Of a stretch of 21,624 bases of DNA, positions 2,351 to 20,944 are shown piece after piece; the stretch's first letter is position 1; each line of letters starts with the position of its first letter. The notes under the pieces were generated by a model. The model searched no databases and was not told the DNA's origin. It saw only the letters and a program-made list of their open reading frames with translations. A program made the translations under genes and the position numbers. The DNA is from Octopus sinensis (Eukaryota). The stretch is from assembly GCF_006345805.1 (NCBI RefSeq), contig NW_021823640.1, positions 1 through 21,624 of the forward strand, in the 5' to 3' direction.

Positions 2351-2650
2351 TGGAGGCACATGGCCTAGTGGTTTGAGTAGCGGACTCGCGGTCGAGGGAT
2401 CGCAAGTTCGAATCTCAGACCGGGCGATGTTTTTGTTTATGAGCGAAACACCTAACATCCATGCGGCTCCGACAGAAGGAAATGGCAAACTTCTGCTGAC
2501 TCTTTCGCTACAAGTTTCTCTCACTCTTTCCCCCTGCATCTTGCAGCTCACCTGCGACGGACCGGCGTTCCAACCAGGTGGGGAACCTATACGCCAAGGA
2601 AACCGGCCCTTATGAGGCAGGCCTGGCTCGAGAAGGAACAACAGAAGAGA
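2351..2650 (+). mobile_element. tRNA-derived SINE, family A, full length with target-site duplication
   Basis: A-box TGGCCTAGTGG and B-box GTTCGAATC. Homologous to copies at 12522, 13570 and 20212. 15-bp TSD with 1 mismatch: AACACCACTGTATTG (2336-2350) and AACACTACTGTATTG (2651-2665). Confidence 0.9.
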
Positions 2651-3315: not shown

Positions 3316-3637
3316 TTAAATCCTTAAAAATGTTTTAGCCCGAAGGCCGCGGCCATGCTGGGGCACCACCGCTGAATGAGCTACACTAGTTTGTGAATCC
3401 ACCTCTGATACGTGGCACTTGATCAACAAGGGAGTTCGATGCTGCTGCCCGCATCCGTGTCTCCCGTCGTGAGGTAGGTTCATCCGGGACTCCCAACAAG
3501 AAGAGATCCAGTTTAGTTTTAAAGAAACCCACATCCACACCATGTAAGTCTCTCAGGCATTTAGGGAGGATGTTAAAGAGCTGTGGTCCTCTGAAACCCA
3601 AGCTGTTGCAGTATCTGGACCTGTATTTTGATGGTGA
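3316..3637 (-). mobile_element. 5'-truncated non-LTR retrotransposon 3' end (CR1/L2-like group ORF2 C-terminus plus 3' UTR)
   Basis: Open frame 3637-3386: SPSKYRSRYCNSLGFRGPQLFNILPKCLRDLHGVDVGFFKTKLDLFLLGVPDEPTSRRETRMRAAASNSLVDQV. The 'LFNxLP...FKxxLDxFL' motif is typical of CR1/L2-like ORF2 ends. Paralog at 17810-18170. Exact clade not resolved. Confidence 0.85.
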
Positions 3638-5032: not shown

Positions 5033-5170
5033 ATGTCTATATATATATACAGAACACCATGATGGACCGTTAGCCCCTACACACATTTTTTTCTCTCCTT
5101 GTTTCTTTCTGTGTTTCTTTTCTGTGTATCTTTCTGTCGAAGAGCGTAGGCTCGAAACGTAAAAGACTTG
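5033..5170 (+). mobile_element. Partial copy 1 of Penelope-like (pLTR-type) non-coding repeat
   Basis: Near-identical direct repeat of 5312-5453 and inverted match to 5710-5846. Contains the hammerhead-like motif. Confidence 0.65.
5129..5166 (+). ncRNA. Minimal type I hammerhead ribozyme-like motif, copy 1 (A6U core variant)
   Basis: TCTTT-CTGTCGA-A-GAGC-GTAG-GCTC-GAA-ACGT-A-AAAGA gives stem I (TCTTT/AAAGA), core, stem II with tetraloop, GAAA, palindromic ACGT helix III and a GUA cleavage triplet (cut predicted after 5161). Confidence 0.6.
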
Positions 5171-5311
5171 GCTTTAAATTCAAGCCTCATGTGTTGCGCT
5201 GCGTTCGATTTTATCTTGGACCAATTTCTGTATGTATGTATGTATGTATGTATGTATGTATGTATGTATGTATGTATGTATGTATCTGTGTGTGTATCTA
5301 TCTATCTATCA

Positions 5312-5485
5312 ATGTCTATATACATATATATACAGAACAACATGATGGACCGTTAGCCCCTACACACATTTTTTTCTCTCCTTGTTTCTTTCTGTGTTTC
5401 TTTTCTGTGTATCTTTCTGTCGAAGAGCGTAGGCTCGAAACGTAAAAGACTTGTTTTATTTCTATTCCTGAGCGCCATACTAATA
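5312..5485 (+). mobile_element. Partial copy 2 of Penelope-like repeat
   Basis: Direct repeat of copy 1, extending to CTGAGCGCCATACTAATA and ending in a local foldback CGCCATA-CTAA-TATGGCG (5473-5490). Confidence 0.65.
5412..5449 (+). ncRNA. Minimal type I hammerhead ribozyme-like motif, copy 2
   Basis: Identical to 5129-5166 and offset by 283 nt. Cut predicted after 5444. Confidence 0.6.
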
Positions 5486-5582
5486 TGGCGTATAACCAGA
5501 AAAGGCTGTAAGATTTTGAATTTCTTCCTATAATAAATAATATTGCATATGCCTTGGCTTAATGTTTGACGTCCTGCTTAAC

Positions 5583-5614
<32 letters not shown>

Positions 5615-5616
<2 letters not shown>

Positions 5617-5830
5617 CGGGAAGGTTTACGAAAATAAACAAAAGACGAAGGCAGGTGGAGTACAAACAAACAATTGTATTAGTATGGCGCTCAGGAATAG
5701 AAATAAAACAAGTCTTTTACGTTTCGAGCCTACGCTTTTCGACAGAAAGATACACAGAAAAGAAACACAGAAAGAAACAAGGAGAGAAAAAAATGTGTGT
5801 AGGGGCTAACGGTCCATCATGGTGTTCTGT
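5615..5830 (-). mobile_element. Most complete copy of the Penelope-like repeat, embedded between (TA)n tracts
   Basis: Minus strand runs ...GATGGACCGTTAGC...hammerhead-like motif...pyrimidine-rich tail...AAACCTTCCCGTT then (AT)n. Diverged relative at 13885-14063. Confidence 0.65.
5713..5750 (-). ncRNA. Hammerhead-like motif copy 3, probably inactivated
   Basis: Same as copies 1 and 2 except G10.1>A (plus-strand position 5737), which breaks the G10.1-C11.1 pair closing stem II. Confidence 0.45.
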
Positions 5831-6099
5831 ATATATATATAGACATTGATAGATAGATAGATACACACATAGATACATATATACATACATACATACATAC
5901 ATACATACATACATACATACATACATACATACATACATACATAAGTTGGTCCAAGATAAAATCGAACGCAGCGCAACACATGAGGCTTGAATTTAAAGCC
6001 ATGCTCATAATTGGAGTAATTAGGAAACTGATTTAAGAAAGCAGAATGTTCACTCACGCTTCTTAGCAAGGCAATCCAATAGGAAAGTCTCTGCCTGCC

Positions 6100-6416: not shown

Positions 6417-6803
6417 GCGTTTGTGTATGTGTGCGTGTGTATATATATATACATATATATACAGAGAGAGCTAGAGAGGAAAAGAGCAGCAGAGACAGAG
6501 ACAGAGGGAGGGAAGTAGAAAGGGACGTAGAAGCACGTACACACAAGTATTTATATGCATATATACATATTTATATAATGTATATATATATTATATATAT
6601 ATATATATATACTTATTATAGCAAACCTTCCCGTTTATATAATATATATAATATATATATATATATATAGCAAACCTTCCCGTTATATATATAATATATA
6701 TATATATATTATATATAAAATAGAGAGATAGAGAGAGAGGAGAGAGACAGATAGACAGACAGACAGACAGATAGACAGACAGACAGACACAGGACAGACA
6801 GAC

Positions 6804-8446: not shown

Positions 8447-8886
8447 GCGCGTTCTTGTAATATATTAATAGACCAACGCCAATTAAATTTTTGAGATAGC
8501 ACAGTAGACTCTTGGAAGTGGATAAAAAAATGTTTGCAATATAGATCTTCCTAAACAAATTAACGTGACAGTCATGGATGGAACGACTTTCATGAGAAGT
8601 CCCCTTTATCAGAGCTCCCGTATGCTTAACCACTGTCACTAACAACAAGGCCCTCTTAGAACCTAACATTTCTCGTCTGTGTCTCTGTTTGGTGAGCGAA
8701 ATTTTTTGGGTGTTAAGTGACGTAATTTTCCTCTTAGACTTTATCGTAGATCATCCATTAGCTTACAATGCATATCTCTGTTTGTTGGCTGACCTTTAGA
8801 GTGTTGGTCAAATTACTTAGCGGTAGTAGAAAGGAAAGAGAACGATAAGTGCATATGAATATGTGTGCGCTTATGTATGTACGTAT

Positions 8887-8926
<40 letters not shown>

Positions 8927-8951
8927 GACACACACGTACATATATCCGTCT

Positions 8952-9262
8952 GTATGTTTTTATCATACCTAATGCGCCTATTATGAGAGGAATTGTTTCT
9001 GTTTTTAAGCTCCCCATTAGATTTACCCAGATTTCCAGATCTTTGTATTTTGCAAGTTTCTCCGTTTCTATTAGAGAATCATTGTCATCTGTTTGTATTG
9101 GTACATCAATTAGGAAGAATTGTTCTTCTTGGTGATCTCTGACAACTATATCCGGCTTATTAGCCTTGATTTCTCTGTGTGTATTGACAAATCCCAGCCT
9201 ATGGTTACTTTCTCATCTTTTCCGTGACCTTTTCTGGGATGTATCTATACCATATCTTTTCT
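8952..9262 (-). mobile_element. Degenerate R4/Dong-like retrotransposon fragment 1 (restriction-like endonuclease domain), older subfamily
   Basis: With frameshifts translates to WYRYIPEKVT..WD..EIKANKPDIVVRDHQEEQFFLIDVPIQTDDNDSLIETEKLAKYKDLEIWVNLMGSLKTETIPLIIGALGMIK. Confidence 0.85.

Positions 9263-9277: not shown

Positions 9278-9348
<71 letters not shown>
9278..9348. repeat. (ATT)n/(TAA)n microsatellite
   Basis: Direct inspection. Confidence 0.97.
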
Positions 9349-9351
<3 letters not shown>

Positions 9352-9837
9352 TAGTTTTATTTTTATAGCGTGCTTTCACTTCAATACCGAGCACAGCTCT
9401 GTGTGCCTTGGGTATGTGCTGTGATTTGTTGTGATGCTCTGATGGTTATTGTATGGAAAGTGTTCTGCGTAGGATGTGTGCAGTGCCTAGTATTGCAATT
9501 TTCTGTATTTAATGTGTTTGTAAGTCCTGGTGTTTTTTGTTATGTATTTGTCTGAATATATTTTTATCATGCCTAATGCACCTACTATGATAGGAATTGT
9601 TTCTGTTTTCAGATTCCACATTCTAGTTACCTCCTATTTCCAGGTCTTTGTATTTTGAGAGTTTTCTCCATTTCTTTTAGAGACACGTTGTCATCAGCCG
9701 GTATCGATACATCAATTAGAAAGCATTTTTTTTCTTCATGATCTCTGACAACTATATCTGGTCTGTTGGCCTTAATTTCTCTATCTGTGTGTATCGGCAT
9801 ATCCCAGAGTATGGTTGCTTTCTCGTTTTCTGTGACC

Positions 9838-9839
<2 letters not shown>
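9349..9839 (-). mobile_element. R4/Dong-like retrotransposon 3' end, fragment 2 (RLE domain pseudogene 9839-9446 plus 3' UTR)
   Basis: KVTENEKATILWDMPIHTDREIKANRPDIVVRDHEEKKCFLIDVSIPADDNVSLKEMEK/LSKYKDLEI/EVTRMWNLKTETIPIIVGALGMIK...QKIAILGTAHILRRTLSIQ*. Shows the RPD..D..K..KYxDL motifs of the PD-(D/E)xK endonuclease, with several 1-nt frameshifts. Confidence 0.92.

Positions 9840-9872
<33 letters not shown>
9839..9872. repeat. (ATT)n microsatellite
   Basis: Direct inspection. Confidence 0.97.
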
Positions 9873-9873
<1 letters not shown>

Positions 9874-10139
9874 TGTAGTTTTATTTTTATAGCATGCTTT
9901 CACTTCACTACCGAGCGCAGCTCTGTGTGCCTTGGGTATGTGCTGTGATTTGTTGTGATGCTCTGGTGGTTATTGTATGTAAAGTGTTCTGCGTAGGATG
10001 TGTGCAGTGCCTAGTAGTGCAATTTTCTGTATGTTATATGTGTTTGTAAGTCCTGGTGTTTTTGTTATATATTTGTCTGAATATTTTCTTATCATGCCTA
10101 ATGCACCTACTATGATAGGAATTGTTTCTGTTTTTAGAT
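9873..10139 (-). mobile_element. R4/Dong-like retrotransposon 3' end, fragment 3
   Basis: Intact frame LKTETIPIIVGALGMIRKYSDKYITKTPGLTNTYNIQKIALLGTAHILRRTLYIQ* (stop 9970-9972). 3' UTR nearly identical to fragment 2. Confidence 0.92.
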
Positions 10140-12521: not shown

Positions 12522-12911
12522 GTGGATGGAAGCACTCCGTCGGTTCCGACGACGAGGGTTCCGGTTGATCCGAATCAACGGAACAGCCTGCTCGTGAAAT
12601 TAACGTGTAAGTGGCTGAGCACTCCACAGACACGTGTACCCTTAACGTAGTTCTCGGGGATATTCAGCGTGACACAGAGAGTGACAAGGCCGGCCCTTTG
12701 AAATACAGTTACAACAGAAACAGGAAATAAGAGTGAGAGAAAGTTGTGGTGAAAGAGTACAGCAGGGATCACCACCATTCCCTGCCGGAGCCTCGTGGAG
12801 CTTTAGGTGTTTTCGCTCAATAAACACTCACAACGCCCGGTCTGGGGATCGAGACCGCGATCCTATGACCGCGAGTCCGCTGCCCTAACCACTGGGCCAT
12901 TGCGCCTCCAC
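12522..12911 (-). mobile_element. SINE family A, full length with alternative 3' tail and TSD
   Basis: Head GTGGAGGCGCAATGGCCCAGTGGTTAGGGCAGCGGAC. Perfect 10-bp TSD GTCTGTAGTA at 12512-12521 and 12912-12921. Confidence 0.92.
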
Positions 12912-13007
12912 GTCTGTAGTATAAAGGATTATTCTTGTTACTGACGTCTTTTCGCTGCTGTTCCGTAGTCCGGGATTAACACTGTTCTAGCAGACAGGAT
13001 TAGGTAG

Positions 13008-13510: not shown

Positions 13511-13863
13511 CGCAGGACTGGCTGTGTTGTAAGAAGCAAGCTTCTCGACCACATTGTTCCGCTGCCCTAGTGGTTAGGGCAGCGGACTCACGGTCGTAGG
13601 ATCGTGGTTTCGATTCCCAGACCGGGCGTTGTGAGTGTTTATTGAGTGACAACATCTAAAAGCTGCACGAGGCTCGGGCAGGGGGTGGTGGCGATCCCTG
13701 CTGTACTCTTTCGCCACAACTTTCTCTCACTCTCCCTTCTCTTGGCCTGCTCGGTTAGCCAGCTGGGTGGCGTCACTTGAAGGCTAAAACAATGCAAAGG
13801 GCTTTGTAACCAGCGATGTGTAGCAACATCTGATAGCTTGGTCGGTCACGGTTATCACGGTGA
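13509..13863 (+). mobile_element. Chimeric SINE: family B head (13509-13561) fused to family A body (13570 onward) with a third tail type
   Basis: GGCGCAGGACTGGCTGTGTTGTAAGAAGC..CCACATTGTTCCG matches the B head. GTGGTTAGGGCAGCGGAC onward matches family A. Confidence 0.85.
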
Positions 13864-13884
13864 TATGTATATTTAGTTGCAATT

Positions 13885-14063
13885 TATAAAAGACAAAACA
13901 TGAAGACAGGTGTGTAAACAACAACTAGGTGTATTAGTTTAATGCTCGAGAAGGTGAGAATTTCTTTTACGTTTCGAGCCTATGCTCTTCAACAGGAAGG
14001 AACACGAAAAAATAAACAGAGAGAAGAAAAGAAAGCTTTAGTAGCTAGCGGTCAATCATGGTG
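13885..14063 (-). mobile_element. Diverged member of the Penelope-like hammerhead repeat
   Basis: Collinear with 5630-5825 (TGTATTAGT, TCTTTTACGTTTCGAGCCTA.GCTCTTC, GCTA.CGGTC.ATCATGGTG). Confidence 0.65.
13963..14000 (-). ncRNA. Hammerhead-like motif copy 4 (diverged)
   Basis: CCTTC-CTGTTGA-A-GAGC-ATAG-GCTC-GAA-ACGT-A-AAAGA. Core and stem II are kept; stem I is weakened. Confidence 0.4.
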
Positions 14064-14067
14064 ATAG

Positions 14068-15781: not shown

Positions 15782-16201
15782 GTAGTAGTAGTAGTAGTAG
15801 TGGCAGAATGAGAGGAGGGAACAGGTGATGCTATCTTGCAAATTCTTCTAGGTCTCAGAAGATTCTAACAAGTTTATCCGTTTGACTGTGTCTGCAAAAT
15901 TCGATCTTTTCTTCTGATTAACGATTGAAAAATTATAAACGAAAAACGAAAAACAATAAAACAAAACAAAACAAGCCATCCATATATATACATAAAAATA
16001 ATAATTCAGTAAATAAACAAACAAATAAACAAAAGAGAAAAAAAATGATATTATTTCGAATCGCTAATTTTCTTTTAATAGATTAAAAAACGAAATTTAT
16101 TTCTTCTTTGTAGAATTTTATTTAATATGACTAACTTTATTTATCACTGGAACCAAAAACCAAAAGACATTCTCTAAAGCAAACACAATCAATTTCCTTA
16201 C

Positions 16202-16265
<64 letters not shown>

Positions 16266-16366
16266 GTTATTATTATTATTATTGTTGTTGTTGTTGTTGC
16301 CATGGTTGTGGTTATATGAATTTTTGTTACTTATCTTTCATTATCTTAGTCAGCGTCTTCATCATC

Positions 16367-16423
<57 letters not shown>

Positions 16424-16463
16424 TATTATTATTATCATTATTAATTATTATTATTTATTTTTA

Positions 16464-16525
<62 letters not shown>

Positions 16526-16529
16526 TTTA

Positions 16530-16573
<44 letters not shown>

Positions 16574-16976
16574 TTTATCATTATTATTATTATTATTCAA
16601 TTTCTTATTGGAATGAAACGAAATTTAATTTTACTTCTTTCCGTTATTACCAACCAATTATCTTTCCTTTTGAGACTGTGTTGTTGATTTGTTGTTGTTG
16701 ATGCTGTTGTTGTTGTTGTTGTTGTTGCTGTTGTTGTTATGATTGTTGTGCTTTTCGTTCTTTTTCCGTTTTTAGATATTGTTGCTTTTTTTTCTTTTCC
16801 TGGTACAATTCAAGAACAATATTCAGTTCGTGACATCTTTGATGAATATAAATAAGAACGTCTGACGACTCTATCCGTAACCAAGAGTACGACGATATTA
16901 GAAAACAACAAACAACGTCTTAAGCAACAACAGCAACAACAATAACTAAAATAACAAGAACTAATAACAACTACTG

Positions 16977-17009
<33 letters not shown>

Positions 17010-17206
17010 ATATTGCCTCTGCTGCTGCTGCTGCTACTACTACTACTACAACTACTACAACTACTGCTGCTGCTGCTGCTACTGCTACTGCTGCTGCTGC
17101 TGCTGCTGATGGTGGTATATAGATGAGCAATACATAATACAATATCGAACAGATCGACACTAAGAAAAGGAACGGAACATACATTGACAGCAACAAGAAA
17201 TAACAT

Positions 17207-17243
<37 letters not shown>

Positions 17244-17330
17244 CACCACTACTACCACCACCACTACCACCAATACCACAACTACTACTACTACCATCAT
17301 CACCACCACCACCACTGCCACTATTACAAA
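15677..17330. repeat. Trinucleotide microsatellite block: (CCT), (ATT), (AGT), ~400 bp (ATT)n at 16200-16600, (GTT), (ACT), (GCT), (ACC)
   Basis: Direct inspection; unique interruptions between arrays. Confidence 0.92.
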
Positions 17331-17809: not shown

Positions 17810-18170
17810 TCAGATTAGTGCCAAGGACTCCAAATTTGCCATCAAGATGTAGGACAAGATACTGTGATAGCCTGGGCTTCAGAGGCCCACAGCTCTTCAA
17901 TATCCTCCCAAAGAACCTGAGAGACCTGCATGGGGTGGATGCAGATGTCTTTAAAATAAAACTGGATCTCTTCCTGTCAGGTGTCCTAGATGAACCAACT
18001 TCACGGCAGGAGGTGCAGATGAGGGCAGCTGCATCGAACTCTCTCATGCACCAAATGGCAATTACTAAAAAGCATTCATGAAGTAAAATCATGTAGCAAC
18101 ACCGAATGGCGGTGCTCCAGCATGGCCACAGCTCGTGAGCTGAAACTAGATAAAATATAAAATATAAATA
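17810..18170 (+). mobile_element. 5'-truncated non-LTR retrotransposon 3' end, same family as 3316-3637
   Basis: Open frame 17818-18081 PRTPNLPSRCRTRYCDSLGFRGPQLFNILPKNLRDLHGVDADVFKIKLDLFLSGVLDEPTSRQEVQMRAAASNSLMHQM. 3' UTR has GGCGGTGCTCCAGCATGGCC and an (ATAAAAT)-like tail. Confidence 0.87.
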
Positions 18171-20211: not shown

Positions 20212-20528
20212 GTGGAGGCGTAATGGCCCAGTGGCTAGGGCAGCGGACTCCCGGTCGGAGAATCACGGTTTGGATTCCCAGACCGGGCGTTGTGCGTGTT
20301 TATTGAATGAAAACATCAAAATCTCCACGAGGTTCCAACAGGGGTAGGTGGCGACCCCTGTTGTACTCCTTCGCCCCGACTTTCTCTCACTCTTTGTTCC
20401 TGTTTCTTGAGTAACGCTTCGATGGACTGGGCTCCCGTCCAGCTGGTGGGAACACATACGACATAGAAACCGGGAAACCGGGCCCATGATCCTGGCTAGG
20501 CTTGAAAAGGGCGCATAAATAAAATAAA
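20212..20528 (+). mobile_element. SINE family A, full length
   Basis: GTGGAGGCGTAATGGCCCAGTGGCTAGGGCAGCGGAC head. Tail related to the 2351 copy (CGATGGACT...CCAG...GGGAAC...GAAACCGG). No clear TSD. Confidence 0.88.
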
Positions 20529-20944
20529 CTTACAATGAACTTTACGAAGCTCGCTCCATCAAATAAGCTGCTGACCTGCCTCCCAAGCACAGAAAATATT
20601 TTGGACTTTGGTAAATAGAATGTTGCCACAAACGCCGATCACTCCATCAACAGAACCATGATAATAACGGAAAATTCGAACCTCACGTTCTATAAAAGAT
20701 TAGTCGAAATTTTGACAGATAATGATTGTAAAATGATCGTTGGAATCCTTTCTGGATGACCAGGAGGCATTCTTCGAAGAACGGTTCGAAATATATATAA
20801 ATATTGGCATTCTAGTAAATTTCCAAACGTCTTTGATTAGGTTAAAATAAATCCGTTTCCATTATGGAGTAAAGAGGAATGGATTCCAGATACCGAAAAC
20901 GTTGGATTAGGTGTTTTATACGCTCACTTGACAACAAAGTGATT

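What the first reader, a model, noticed from the sequence alone, without database searches (positions are those of the whole stretch)
5129..5449. Tandem non-canonical hammerhead ribozymes 283 nt apart: a retrozyme-like or self-processing unit
Seen: two identical motifs TCTTT-CTGTCGA-A-GAGC(GTAG)GCTC-GAAACGTA-AAAGA fold as a complete minimal type I hammerhead, with a zero-loop palindromic helix III (ACGU) and a GUA cleavage site. Known: Penelope-like elements carry minimal type I hammerheads whose palindromic helix III works as a dimer; metazoan retrozymes are short tandem units bounded by such ribozymes and give circRNAs; an extra A between A9 and G10.1 is tolerated (CChMVd viroid hammerhead). 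Unusual: the core reads CUGUCGA rather than CUGANGA (A6U). All four window copies keep U6 while varying at N7 (C/U) and loop II (GUAG/AUAG), the positions where hammerheads tolerate change. Inference: this may be an active variant ribozyme family, and the two tandem copies could dimerise in cis and excise a 283-nt RNA (5162-5444). The tandem may also be only a by-product of the local rearrangement.
Basis: partly seen in the sequence, partly recalled or inferred. Interest (0 to 1): 0.85.

Follow-up and report, generated by a model that had tools for sequence, protein, structure and literature searches.

The report
Hammerhead-like motif in a retroelement repeat
A short repeated retroelement in this animal-type genome carries a small RNA motif built like the self-cutting "hammerhead" of Penelope-like jumping genes, but with one essential core base changed, so it is more likely a weakened or retired ribozyme than a new active one.

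Summary
The motif is real. CTGTCGAAGAGCGTAGGCTCGAAACGTA occurs identically at 5134-5161 and 5417-5444 (+), 283 nt apart. Near-copies lie at 5718-5745 (-) and 13968-13995 (-). It matches the published minimal type I hammerhead of Penelope-like elements (PLEs): 5-bp helix I, an extra base after A9, a G10.1-C11.1 pair, palindromic ACGU as helix III, and a GUA site. The one exception is U instead of A at core position 6. A descriptor search finds nothing comparable in 600 simulated windows.

The motif lies about 105 nt from the 3' end of a roughly 385-nt non-coding repeat that abuts a (TA)n tract. The locus is a partial tandem plus an inverted copy, as described for PLE insertions.

The 283-nt "unit" is not a retrozyme monomer. 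In three of four copies the motif is followed by a different sequence (Z), and the tandem junction lies 9 nt past the predicted cut site.

Three copies are near-identical, so U6 rests on two lineages. There is no stem covariation, and three changes break pairs. The motif is still the best-conserved block between lineages (31/33 against 64% elsewhere, p about 0.01).

Published mutagenesis shows low activity for changes in the CUGA turn. Most likely this is an attenuated PLE-type hammerhead; activity is untested. No further family copies could be retrieved.

The parts
5129..5166 (+). Hammerhead-like motif, copy 1. Helix I 5' strand 5129-5133; core CUGUCGA 5134-5140 with U6 at 5137; bulged A 5141; helix II 5142-5145 with 5150-5153, loop GUAG; GAA 5154-5156; palindromic ACGU 5157-5160; A17 at 5161; helix I 3' strand 5162-5166.
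5412..5449 (+). Hammerhead-like motif, copy 2. Identical to copy 1 and 283 nt downstream; U6 at 5420; predicted cut site 5444/5445.
5713..5750 (-). Hammerhead-like motif, copy 3. U6 at 5742. G10.1 is changed to A at 5737, which breaks the closing pair of helix II.
13963..14000 (-). Hammerhead-like motif, copy 4, from the diverged lineage. U6 at 13992; N7 is U (13991); loop II is AUAG (13983); two A.C mismatches in helix I.
5033..5170 (+). X1: a partial upstream copy of the repeat, truncated at both ends. It is 137/138 identical to X3 and ends 9 nt past the predicted cut site, where it joins the 5' end of the next copy (CTTG|GC).
5171..5485 (+). Left-arm copy of the repeat. It comprises the 5' part Y (5171-5225, GCTTTAAATTC...), internal (ATGT)n and (CTAT)n microsatellites, X2 (5316-5453, carrying motif copy 2) and the first 32 nt of Z (5454-5485).
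5587..5616 (.). (TA)n tract between the two inverted arms. It abuts the 3' end of the right-arm copy and is the putative insertion target.
   Evidence: PMC8557442
5615..6001 (-). Right-arm copy of the repeat, the most complete one (about 385 nt). Order is Y' (6001-5945), microsatellites, X3 (5846-5709, carrying motif copy 3), then the full Z (5708 to about 5615), ending ...CGTAAACCTTCCCGTTA next to (TA)n.
13880..14066 (-). Diverged copy X4+Z4 of the same repeat, about 68% identical to X3+Z3. It is preceded by (TA)n and has no detectable Y part.
6626..6685 (+). Two further instances of the repeat's 3'-terminal AAACCTTCCCGTT(T)A beside (TA)n. They may be extremely 5'-truncated copies or a local minisatellite.

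Best explanation
The motif is a hammerhead-derived element of the Penelope-like-element (PLE) 'minimal type I' kind. It sits about 105 nt from the 3' end of a short (about 385 nt), non-coding, microsatellite-containing retroelement that ends against (TA)n.

Shown: the sequence architecture, the repeat anatomy and the conservation of the block.

Inferred, step 1: the repeat is a non-autonomous relative of a PLE, or a fragment of a PLE pseudo-LTR, mobilised in trans.

Inferred, step 2: the local arrangement is X1, then Y-X2-Z, then (TA)n, then an inverted Y-X3-Z copy. This is a complex partial-tandem plus inverted insertion, or an early rearrangement of one, of the type PLE integration produces. 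The two motifs 283 nt apart are therefore a pseudo-LTR-like duplication, not monomer boundaries of a retrozyme.

Inferred, step 3: the A6-to-U change arose in a master copy ancestral to both lineages in the window and did not stop propagation. Either hammerhead cleavage is not required for PLE-type mobilisation, or weak protein-assisted dimeric cleavage suffices.

On its own the RNA is expected to cleave very poorly or not at all. The block is probably retained as part of the element's 3' module, for example for recognition by the reverse transcriptase/endonuclease.
For: Architecture:
- Every feature listed for metazoan PLE min-HHRs in PMC4209133 is present except A6.
- Canonical-core motifs of the same build were found in unrelated invertebrate contigs: CTGAAGA-A-GGTC..GACC-GAAACGTT, CTGACGA-A-GGGC..GCTC-GAAACGTC and CTGATGA-T-...-GAAACGTT.
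- Chance is unlikely: 0 descriptor hits in 600 simulated windows.

Context:
- A partial tandem and an adjacent inverted copy are present.
- The 3' end abuts (TA)n, and 3'-terminal fragments recur beside (TA)n.
- The motif lies near the 3' end.
- All of these match the PLE insertion features in PMC8557442.
- 'Dual min-HHRs 100-700 bp apart on opposite strands' are described in PMC4209133.

Conservation:
- The motif is the best-conserved block between the two lineages: 31/33 identical against 64% outside, permutation p = 0.009.
- With copy 3 itself the figures are 30/33 and p = 0.04.

Against strong catalysis:
- Apart from a C3/G8 base-pair swap, single and double mutants of the CUGA turn showed low activity (PMC9901934).
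- A natural A6C variant cleaves at less than 0.1 per min (PMC3088659).
- PLE min-HHRs are already slow in vitro.
- Hammerhead catalytic mutants do not affect PLE insertion in vitro, and no RNA-seq ends map to the hammerhead site (PMC11167929).
- Naiad PLEs thrive without canonical hammerheads.

Thermodynamics:
- In the 371-nt transcript, helix I has under 1% and helix II 11-19% pairing probability.
- The double-hammerhead dimer (-15.9 kcal/mol) is less stable than two monomers (-17.2) or the dimer MFE (-23.6).
Against: - No PLE reverse transcriptase or GIY-YIG ORF is visible in the window (read by eye only; no profile search was run), so the PLE link rests on architecture alone.
- The arms lie tail-to-tail around the (TA)n tract, not in the head-to-head layout usually drawn for PLEs.
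- The left copy stops after 32 nt of Z and is followed by 104 nt of unique DNA, which the model does not explain.
- Only two independent lineages were available, so it is unknown whether U6 is the family consensus genome-wide.
- Conservation of the whole core, including G5, G8 and G12, would also be expected if the ribozyme were still used.
- Nothing here measures cleavage.
Confidence: 0.55

Rival explanations
1. The U6 motif is an active variant hammerhead. The two tandem copies pair through ACGU to form a double hammerhead in cis, excise the 283-nt RNA 5162-5444, and may yield a circular RNA, as in a retrozyme.
For: - The min-HHR architecture is complete apart from position 6.
- U6 is shared by two lineages, and the block is conserved beyond its flanks.
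- The differences between lineages inside the core fall only on N7 and loop II.
- Of the four CpGs in the motif, the two at constrained positions (C11.1-G12 and C15.2-G16.2) are kept and the two at free positions are lost. My estimate is Fisher p about 0.1.
- A natural A6C variant keeps detectable activity (PMC3088659).
- A PLE hammerhead can be protein-assisted (PMC11167929).
Against: - Substitutions at A6 give low activity and are not rescued by second-site changes.
- Minimal PLE hammerheads are already poor cleavers.
- No compensatory changes are seen, and three changes break pairs.
- The family continuation after the motif is Z, not Y, in three of four copies, so the family is not a circularly permuted 283-nt unit.
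- The tandem junction is 9 nt past the cut site.
- The hammerhead fold is disfavoured in the full transcript and as a dimer.
Confidence: 0.17
2. The resemblance to a hammerhead is coincidental. The block is simply a conserved segment (for example a hairpin GAGC-GUAG-GCUC) of a SINE-like repeat mobilised by a LINE, with no hammerhead ancestry.
For: - Rfam reports no hammerhead family even at E<=10 on 76 nt.
- MFE z-scores are unremarkable.
- A defining core base is wrong.
- No PLE ORF is evident nearby.
- LINE fragments are present in the window.
Against: - The Rfam result is uninformative, because Rfam also misses the canonical-core min-HHRs in L001 and L002.
- A one-mismatch min-HHR occurred 0 times in 600 simulated windows. 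My analytic estimate is about 2e-5 per window.
- Optional PLE-specific traits that no descriptor forces (bulged A, ACGU palindrome, GUA) are all present, as are the tandem/inverted layout and the adjoining (TA)n tract.
Confidence: 0.1
3. The tandem and the palindrome are not products of retrotransposition. They would instead be later DNA-level events (replication slippage, or fold-back duplication at the microsatellites) or an assembly artefact of a repeat-rich region. Under this reading the 283-nt spacing has no biological meaning.
For: - The arms are 93-99% identical, and X1 equals X3 except for one base.
- The junctions lie at or next to microsatellites and show 2-nt microhomology (TG).
- The window is saturated with simple repeats.
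- The tail-to-tail layout is not the standard PLE picture.
Against: - Y starts at the same nucleotide in both arms, as expected for an element terminus.
- Partial tandem plus inverted copies are a recognised PLE signature.
- This rival concerns only the arrangement and is compatible with the best explanation of the motif itself.
Confidence: 0.18

Closest known systems
Minimal type I hammerheads of Penelope-like elements (min-HHR; Cervera & de la Pena 2014, PMC4209133; Lunse, Weinberg & Breaker 2017, cited in PMC6765202)
   Same: Type I topology with an open helix I of 5 bp; an unpaired base between A9 and G10.1; a G10.1-C11.1 pair; helix III reduced to the palindrome A15.1-C-G-U16.1, so that only a dimer can form it; a GUH site; occurrence in repeats, singly, in tandem, or on opposite strands a few hundred bp apart; position near the 3' end of an element that abuts (TA)n.
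   Different: Position 6 of the CUGA turn is U, not A, in all four copies. Helix II is 4 bp, whereas Schistosoma families have 7-8 bp. No PLE ORF is linked in the window. Stem covariation, which the published families show, could not be demonstrated.
Metazoan non-LTR retrozymes (Cervera & de la Pena 2020, PMC7229834)
   Same: Low-GC repeat; two hammerhead-type motifs in direct orientation about 300 nt apart; proposed PLE-dependent mobilisation.
   Different: Retrozymes carry canonical type I hammerheads with loop 1-loop 2 contacts and form true head-to-tail arrays whose monomer closes on itself. Here the motif is minimal, there are about 1.5 units, the junction is 9 nt off the cut site, and the family's normal continuation after the motif (Z) differs from the start of the putative monomer (Y).
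Schistosome SM-alpha / Sj-alpha SINE-like elements with hammerheads (Ferbeyre 1998 and Laha 2000, as cited in PMC6765202)
   Same: A short non-coding retroposon that carries a type I hammerhead-type motif and is present in many copies.
   Different: Those hammerheads have a consensus core and cleave in vitro. No sequence similarity was tested here.
Natural hammerhead core variants (Perreault et al. 2011, PMC3088659): A6C in phage Bcep176, U3-A8, and insertions
   Same: A natural sequence with a non-consensus base at position 6 in an otherwise complete hammerhead.
   Different: The known case is A6C in a tertiary-stabilised ribozyme, with measured activity below 0.1 per min. A6U fixed in a eukaryotic repeat family was not found in the papers searched.
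CChMVd viroid hammerhead with an extra A between A9 and G10.1 (De la Pena & Flores 2001, cited in PMC4209133)
   Same: The extra unpaired nucleotide at the 5' base of helix II.
   Different: That is a type III viroid ribozyme. In PLE min-HHRs this extra base is the rule, so here it is a family trait and not a second anomaly.

Membership tests
Hammerhead ribozyme (any type) | Conserved core C3 U4 G5 A6 N7 G8 A9 ... G12 A13 A14 A15.1-U16.1 H17 | tested here: not met
   Ten of the eleven fixed core positions and H17 match. A6 is U in all four copies.
Hammerhead ribozyme (any type) | Site-specific self-cleavage 3' of H17 | not testable with these tools
   This needs in vitro transcription or mapping of RNA ends. 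The literature predicts low activity for changes at position 6.
Hammerhead ribozyme (any type) | Recognition by the curated Rfam hammerhead covariance models | tested here: inconclusive
   No hit at gathering score or at E<=10. The same models also miss canonical-core min-HHRs in the control loci L001 and L002.
PLE minimal type I hammerhead (min-HHR) | Type I topology with a short open helix I (4-5 bp) | tested here: met
   UCUUU pairs with AAAGA (5 bp) in copies 1-3. Copy 4 has 5 of 7 pairs with two A.C mismatches.
PLE minimal type I hammerhead (min-HHR) | Unpaired nucleotide between A9 and G10.1, and a G10.1-C11.1 pair | tested here: met
   Bulged A at 5141 and 5424. The G-C closing pair is present in copies 1, 2 and 4 and is lost (A.C) in copy 3.
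PLE minimal type I hammerhead (min-HHR) | Helix III reduced to palindromic 15.1-15.2-16.2-16.1, allowing a dimeric double hammerhead | tested here: met
   ACGU in all four copies. The double-hammerhead pairing can be drawn without a pseudoknot but is not the favoured fold.
PLE minimal type I hammerhead (min-HHR) | Consensus families with covariation and compensatory changes in helices I and II | tested here: inconclusive
   Only three distinct sequences were available. They show 0 compensatory changes and 3 pair-breaking changes. No further copies could be retrieved.
PLE minimal type I hammerhead (min-HHR) | Location in the pseudo-LTR of an element encoding RT plus GIY-YIG endonuclease, or a truncated derivative | tested here: inconclusive
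   No such ORF was seen among filtered six-frame segments of the window (by eye; no profile search). The layout is PLE-like: partial tandem, inverted copy, an adjoining (TA)n tract (PMC8557442).
Metazoan non-LTR retrozyme | Head-to-tail array (dimer or longer) of a 150-450 bp monomer that closes on itself at the hammerhead site | tested here: not met
   Two motifs bound 283 nt. However, the sequence after motif 2 (Z) differs from the sequence after motif 1 (Y) beyond 9 shared nt, and copies 3 and 4 also continue into Z.
Metazoan non-LTR retrozyme | Canonical type I hammerhead with helix I/II loop-loop tertiary contacts | tested here: not met
   Helix I is open and only 5 bp, so there is no loop 1. 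The motif is of the minimal PLE kind (PMC7229834).
Metazoan non-LTR retrozyme | Expression as a small circular RNA | not testable with these tools
   No transcriptome data are available for this sequence.

The most novel reading that the evidence does not exclude
A family of Penelope-type minimal hammerheads has fixed U at core position 6 and still self-cleaves, as a dimer and/or with help from the element's protein. If so, the 'invariant' CUGA turn would be replaceable by CUGU in this scaffold, and descriptor-based censuses that hard-code A6 would have missed a whole class of ribozymes.
Probability: 0.13. Interest if true: 0.7.

Novelty: new variant of a known kind. Interest (0 to 1): 0.33.

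Why it matters
Searches for genomic hammerheads hard-code the catalytic boxes, so families with a fixed core substitution are invisible to them.

A repeat family that keeps the whole minimal hammerhead scaffold but carries U6 in two diverged lineages is a natural experiment on an open question: do Penelope-type hammerheads need to cut at all? In vitro, hammerhead mutants do not impair PLE insertion, and Naiad elements lack the motif.

If U6 is inactive yet conserved, the motif would be serving as something other than a ribozyme, for example a protein-recognition module. If U6 is active, the hammerhead consensus widens.

Either outcome is of modest, specialist interest. Nothing here suggests a new kind of system.

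Tried and rejected
1. Rfam searches at the gathering threshold and at E<=10 gave no hammerhead hit. I rejected this as evidence after the control showed that Rfam also misses canonical min-HHRs.

2. Retrieval of more family copies failed by every route.
- Exact-pattern scans of viral contigs and metagenome contigs found nothing.
- A second metagenome scan and a GTDB genome scan gave only chance hits in prokaryotic coding DNA.
- Protein-proxy searches with the repeat's open frame and with a SINE-consensus frame found nothing.
- Exact look-up of 10 window ORFs found none in the collection.
- A LINE-like ORF fragment found only relatives at 58% identity or less, from other species. Their contigs contain no copy of the repeat.

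3. A literature string search for the motif found no paper. A search for 'A6U' with hammerhead found nothing relevant. Lunse et al. 2017 is not held.

4. I looked for an alternative register that would give a canonical CUGANGA. None exists, because the base after CUG is U in every copy.

5. I looked for other, canonical-core min-HHRs in the window and found none with a helix II.

6. I tested whether Y is present upstream of copy 4. The alignment score was not above shuffles.

7. I considered a tRNA-like B-box reading of GGCTCGAAAC. I rejected it because there is no A box upstream and ARAGORN finds nothing.

8. The organism was not identified. The tRNA-derived SINE and the microsatellite load suggest an invertebrate animal. 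My own recollection suggests a cephalopod-like SINE, but I did not verify this.

Full report
OBSERVATION

The window is eukaryotic in character. GC content is about 35%, it is saturated with microsatellites, and it carries tRNA-derived SINE copies and LINE fragments.

The 28-nt string CTGTCGAAGAGCGTAGGCTCGAAACGTA occurs at 5134-5161 and 5417-5444 on the + strand. A copy with one change lies at 5718-5745 (-). A copy with two changes lies at 13968-13995 (-). None is expected by chance. The first two are 283 nt apart.

With flanks, the sequence reads UCUUU-CUGUCGA-A-GAGC(GUAG)GCUC-GAA-ACGU-A-AAAGA. This is a type I hammerhead layout with a 5-bp helix I, a 4-bp helix II, a zero-loop palindromic helix III and a GUA site. 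Position 6 is U where the consensus has A.

I wrote a descriptor modelled on the published min-HHR descriptor and allowed at most one core mismatch. It returns exactly these two sites, and the mismatch is at position 6 in both. It returns nothing in 600 Markov-simulated windows.

- Copies 1-3 belong to one local structure and are almost identical. X1 and X3 differ at 1 of 138 positions; X1 and X2 differ at 5 of 138. 'Four copies keep U6' therefore means two independent lineages.
- Copy 3 has G10.1 changed to A, which breaks the most conserved pair of helix II.
- Copy 4 has two uncompensated A.C mismatches in helix I.
- Over three distinct sequences there are 0 compensatory changes and 3 pair-breaking changes.
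- The two differences at 'tolerated' positions (N7 C to U; loop II G to A) are both CpG transitions, the most mutable sites.

ANATOMY OF THE LOCUS

Repeat finding and BLAST within the window, plus direct reading, give the following map.

| Coordinates | Strand | Segment |
|---|---|---|
| 5033-5170 | + | X1, partial copy carrying motif 1 |
| 5171-5225 | + | Y, followed by (ATGT)n and (CTAT)n |
| 5316-5453 | + | X2, carrying motif 2 |
| 5454-5485 | + | First 32 nt of Z |
| 5486-5586 |. | Unique DNA (one search tested 5486-5589) |
| 5587-5616 | . | (TA)n |
| 5615-6001 | - | Complete copy Y'-X3-Z |

The complete copy ends ...CGTAAACCTTCCCGTTA directly against the (TA)n tract. Y begins at the same nucleotide in both arms (GGCTTTAAATTC), which is what an element terminus looks like. 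The 3'-terminal AAACCTTCCCGTT(T)A recurs twice more beside (TA)n at 6626-6685.

A fourth, diverged copy (X4-Z4, 14066-13880, minus strand) shares X and about 100 nt of Z. It is preceded by (TA)n and has no detectable Y.

The repeat is therefore a roughly 385-nt non-coding element with internal microsatellites. Its sense strand is the strand of the motif, and the motif lies about 105 nt from its 3' end.

IS THE 283-nt STRETCH A SELF-PROCESSING UNIT?

If the family propagated as a 283-nt circle or tandem monomer, every motif would be followed by the start of Y. In copies 2, 3 and 4 it is followed by Z. Only copy 1 runs into Y. That junction (CTTG|GC at 5170/5171) lies 9 nt beyond the predicted cut site and shares a TG microhomology with the other arm's flank. 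There are only about 1.5 units.

The arrangement is better described as a 5'-truncated partial copy in front of a full-5' copy, plus an inverted copy. Craig et al. 2021 describe this picture for Penelope-like elements: partial tandems forming pseudo-LTRs, adjacent inverted copies, tails, a (TA)n target bias and hammerheads near the 3' end (PMC8557442). Cervera & de la Pena 2014 noted 'dual min-HHRs 100-700 bp apart on opposite strands' (PMC4209133).

Two details do not fit neatly. The arms lie tail-to-tail rather than head-to-head. The left copy stops after 32 nt of Z. A later DNA-level rearrangement or an assembly problem cannot be excluded.

IS IT A HAMMERHEAD?

By architecture it matches the PLE minimal hammerhead point by point. 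The published non-descriptor traits are an extra nucleotide between A9 and G10.1, a G10.1-C11.1 pair, palindromic 15.2-16.2 positions and a 4-5 bp helix I. All are present here.

Unrelated invertebrate contigs came in as by-catch of a protein search. They contain canonical-core motifs of the same build, for example CTGACGA-A-GGGC(TAGC)GCTC-GAAACGTC.

Rfam finds no hammerhead in the window. It also misses those canonical controls, so its silence carries no weight.

The one defining feature that fails is A6. The literature on that position is consistent:
- In a complete single- and double-mutant scan, mutants in the CUGA turn had low activity and showed no rescue, apart from the C3/G8 swap (PMC9901934).
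- The one natural position-6 variant that has been tested (A6C, phage Bcep176) cleaves at less than 0.1 per min (PMC3088659).
- PLE min-HHRs with consensus cores are already poor cleavers even as dimers.

Thermodynamic prediction does not help the ribozyme reading. The motif's folding energy is like that of shuffled sequence. In the 371-nt tandem transcript, helix I has under 1% pairing probability. The double-hammerhead dimer (-15.9 kcal/mol) is less stable than two monomers or the alternative extended duplex.

EVIDENCE FOR SOME CONSTRAINT

Between the two lineages, the 33-nt motif is the best-conserved block of the element. It is 31/33 identical against 64% outside, with permutation p = 0.009 using the lineage consensus, and 30/33 with p = 0.04 using copy 3 itself. 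U6 is shared, so it predates the split and did not stop propagation.

This fits either a still-used, weak and perhaps protein-assisted ribozyme, or a motif kept for another role. Frangieh et al. 2024 found that hammerhead catalytic mutants do not affect PLE insertion in vitro, that the PLE hammerhead needed the protein to cleave, and that no RNA-seq ends map to its cut site (PMC11167929). Naiad PLEs proliferate without canonical hammerheads. I therefore favour the second reading, at moderate confidence.

LIMITS

The source genome is absent from every collection I could search. The decisive census could not be run: how many copies exist, what base they carry at position 6, whether stems covary, and whether an autonomous PLE shares the module. 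No PLE ORF was seen in the window, but this rests on inspection by eye of filtered six-frame segments. I ran no profile search.

VERDICT

The interpretation as a PLE-type minimal hammerhead scaffold is supported. The retrozyme-like 283-nt unit is not supported. Activity of the U6 core is untested and disfavoured.

I classify this as a new variant of a known kind. It is hammerhead-derived, it fails one defining core position, and it is of modest interest. About a one-in-eight chance remains that it is a genuinely active U6 hammerhead, which would be notable.

Noticed in passing
window 2361-2640(+), 13563-13900(+), 20224-20560(+), 12560-12925(-): Four copies of a tRNA-derived SINE. The head resembles a tRNA with A and B boxes, and the body is conserved (...CTGCTGTACTCTTTCGCCACAACTTTCTCTCACTCTT). 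ARAGORN calls none of them a tRNA. Copy 13563-13900 abuts the diverged hammerhead-bearing repeat in the opposite orientation.
   Followed up: partly
window 3413-3634 and 17839-18060: A distant inverted pair (77% complementary, 14 kb apart) that encodes the C-terminal end of a LINE-type ORF (...GPQLFNILPK.LRDLHGVD..FK.KLD.FL..V.DEPT). These are two old copies of one LINE family's 3' end.
   Followed up: no
window 8874-9212(-), 9490-9899(-); tandem 9314-9517 / 9838-10041: ORF fragments resembling non-LTR retrotransposon proteins (..ANKPDIVV..LIDV..EK..KY.DL..) lie inside a roughly 524-bp tandem duplication (95% identity). The best database relatives are only 55-58% identical; the one named hit is from Lingula anatina.
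   Followed up: partly
window 6626-6637 and 6675-6685 (+), 5614-5624 (-): The repeat's 3'-terminal AAACCTTCCCGTT(T)A recurs three times, each time directly beside a (TA)n tract. These could be extreme 5' truncations of the element inserted in (TA)n, or a small local minisatellite.
   Followed up: partly
L001 2716-2739(+), L002 552-576(+), L008 ~17822(-); also L001 16417-16443(+), 2954-2977(-), L002 5462-5485(+): Unrelated invertebrate ENA contigs, fetched only as by-catch, carry several canonical-core minimal hammerheads per 20 kb. They have the same bulged base, and three of them have the same GAAACGU helix III. Rfam at E<=1 reports none of them, so curated models miss this abundant class.
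   Followed up: partly
window 16100-17330: Long arrays of (TTA)n, (TTG)n, (CTA)n, (CTG)n and (CAC)n trinucleotide repeats create spurious low-complexity ORFs. Overall the window has an unusually high microsatellite load.
   Followed up: no
window 5470-5492: At the point where the left arm stops matching the right arm, the sequence CGCCATA-CTAA-TATGGCG forms a 7-bp perfect hairpin that is absent from the right arm. This may be a fold-back or template-switch scar at the breakpoint.
   Followed up: no
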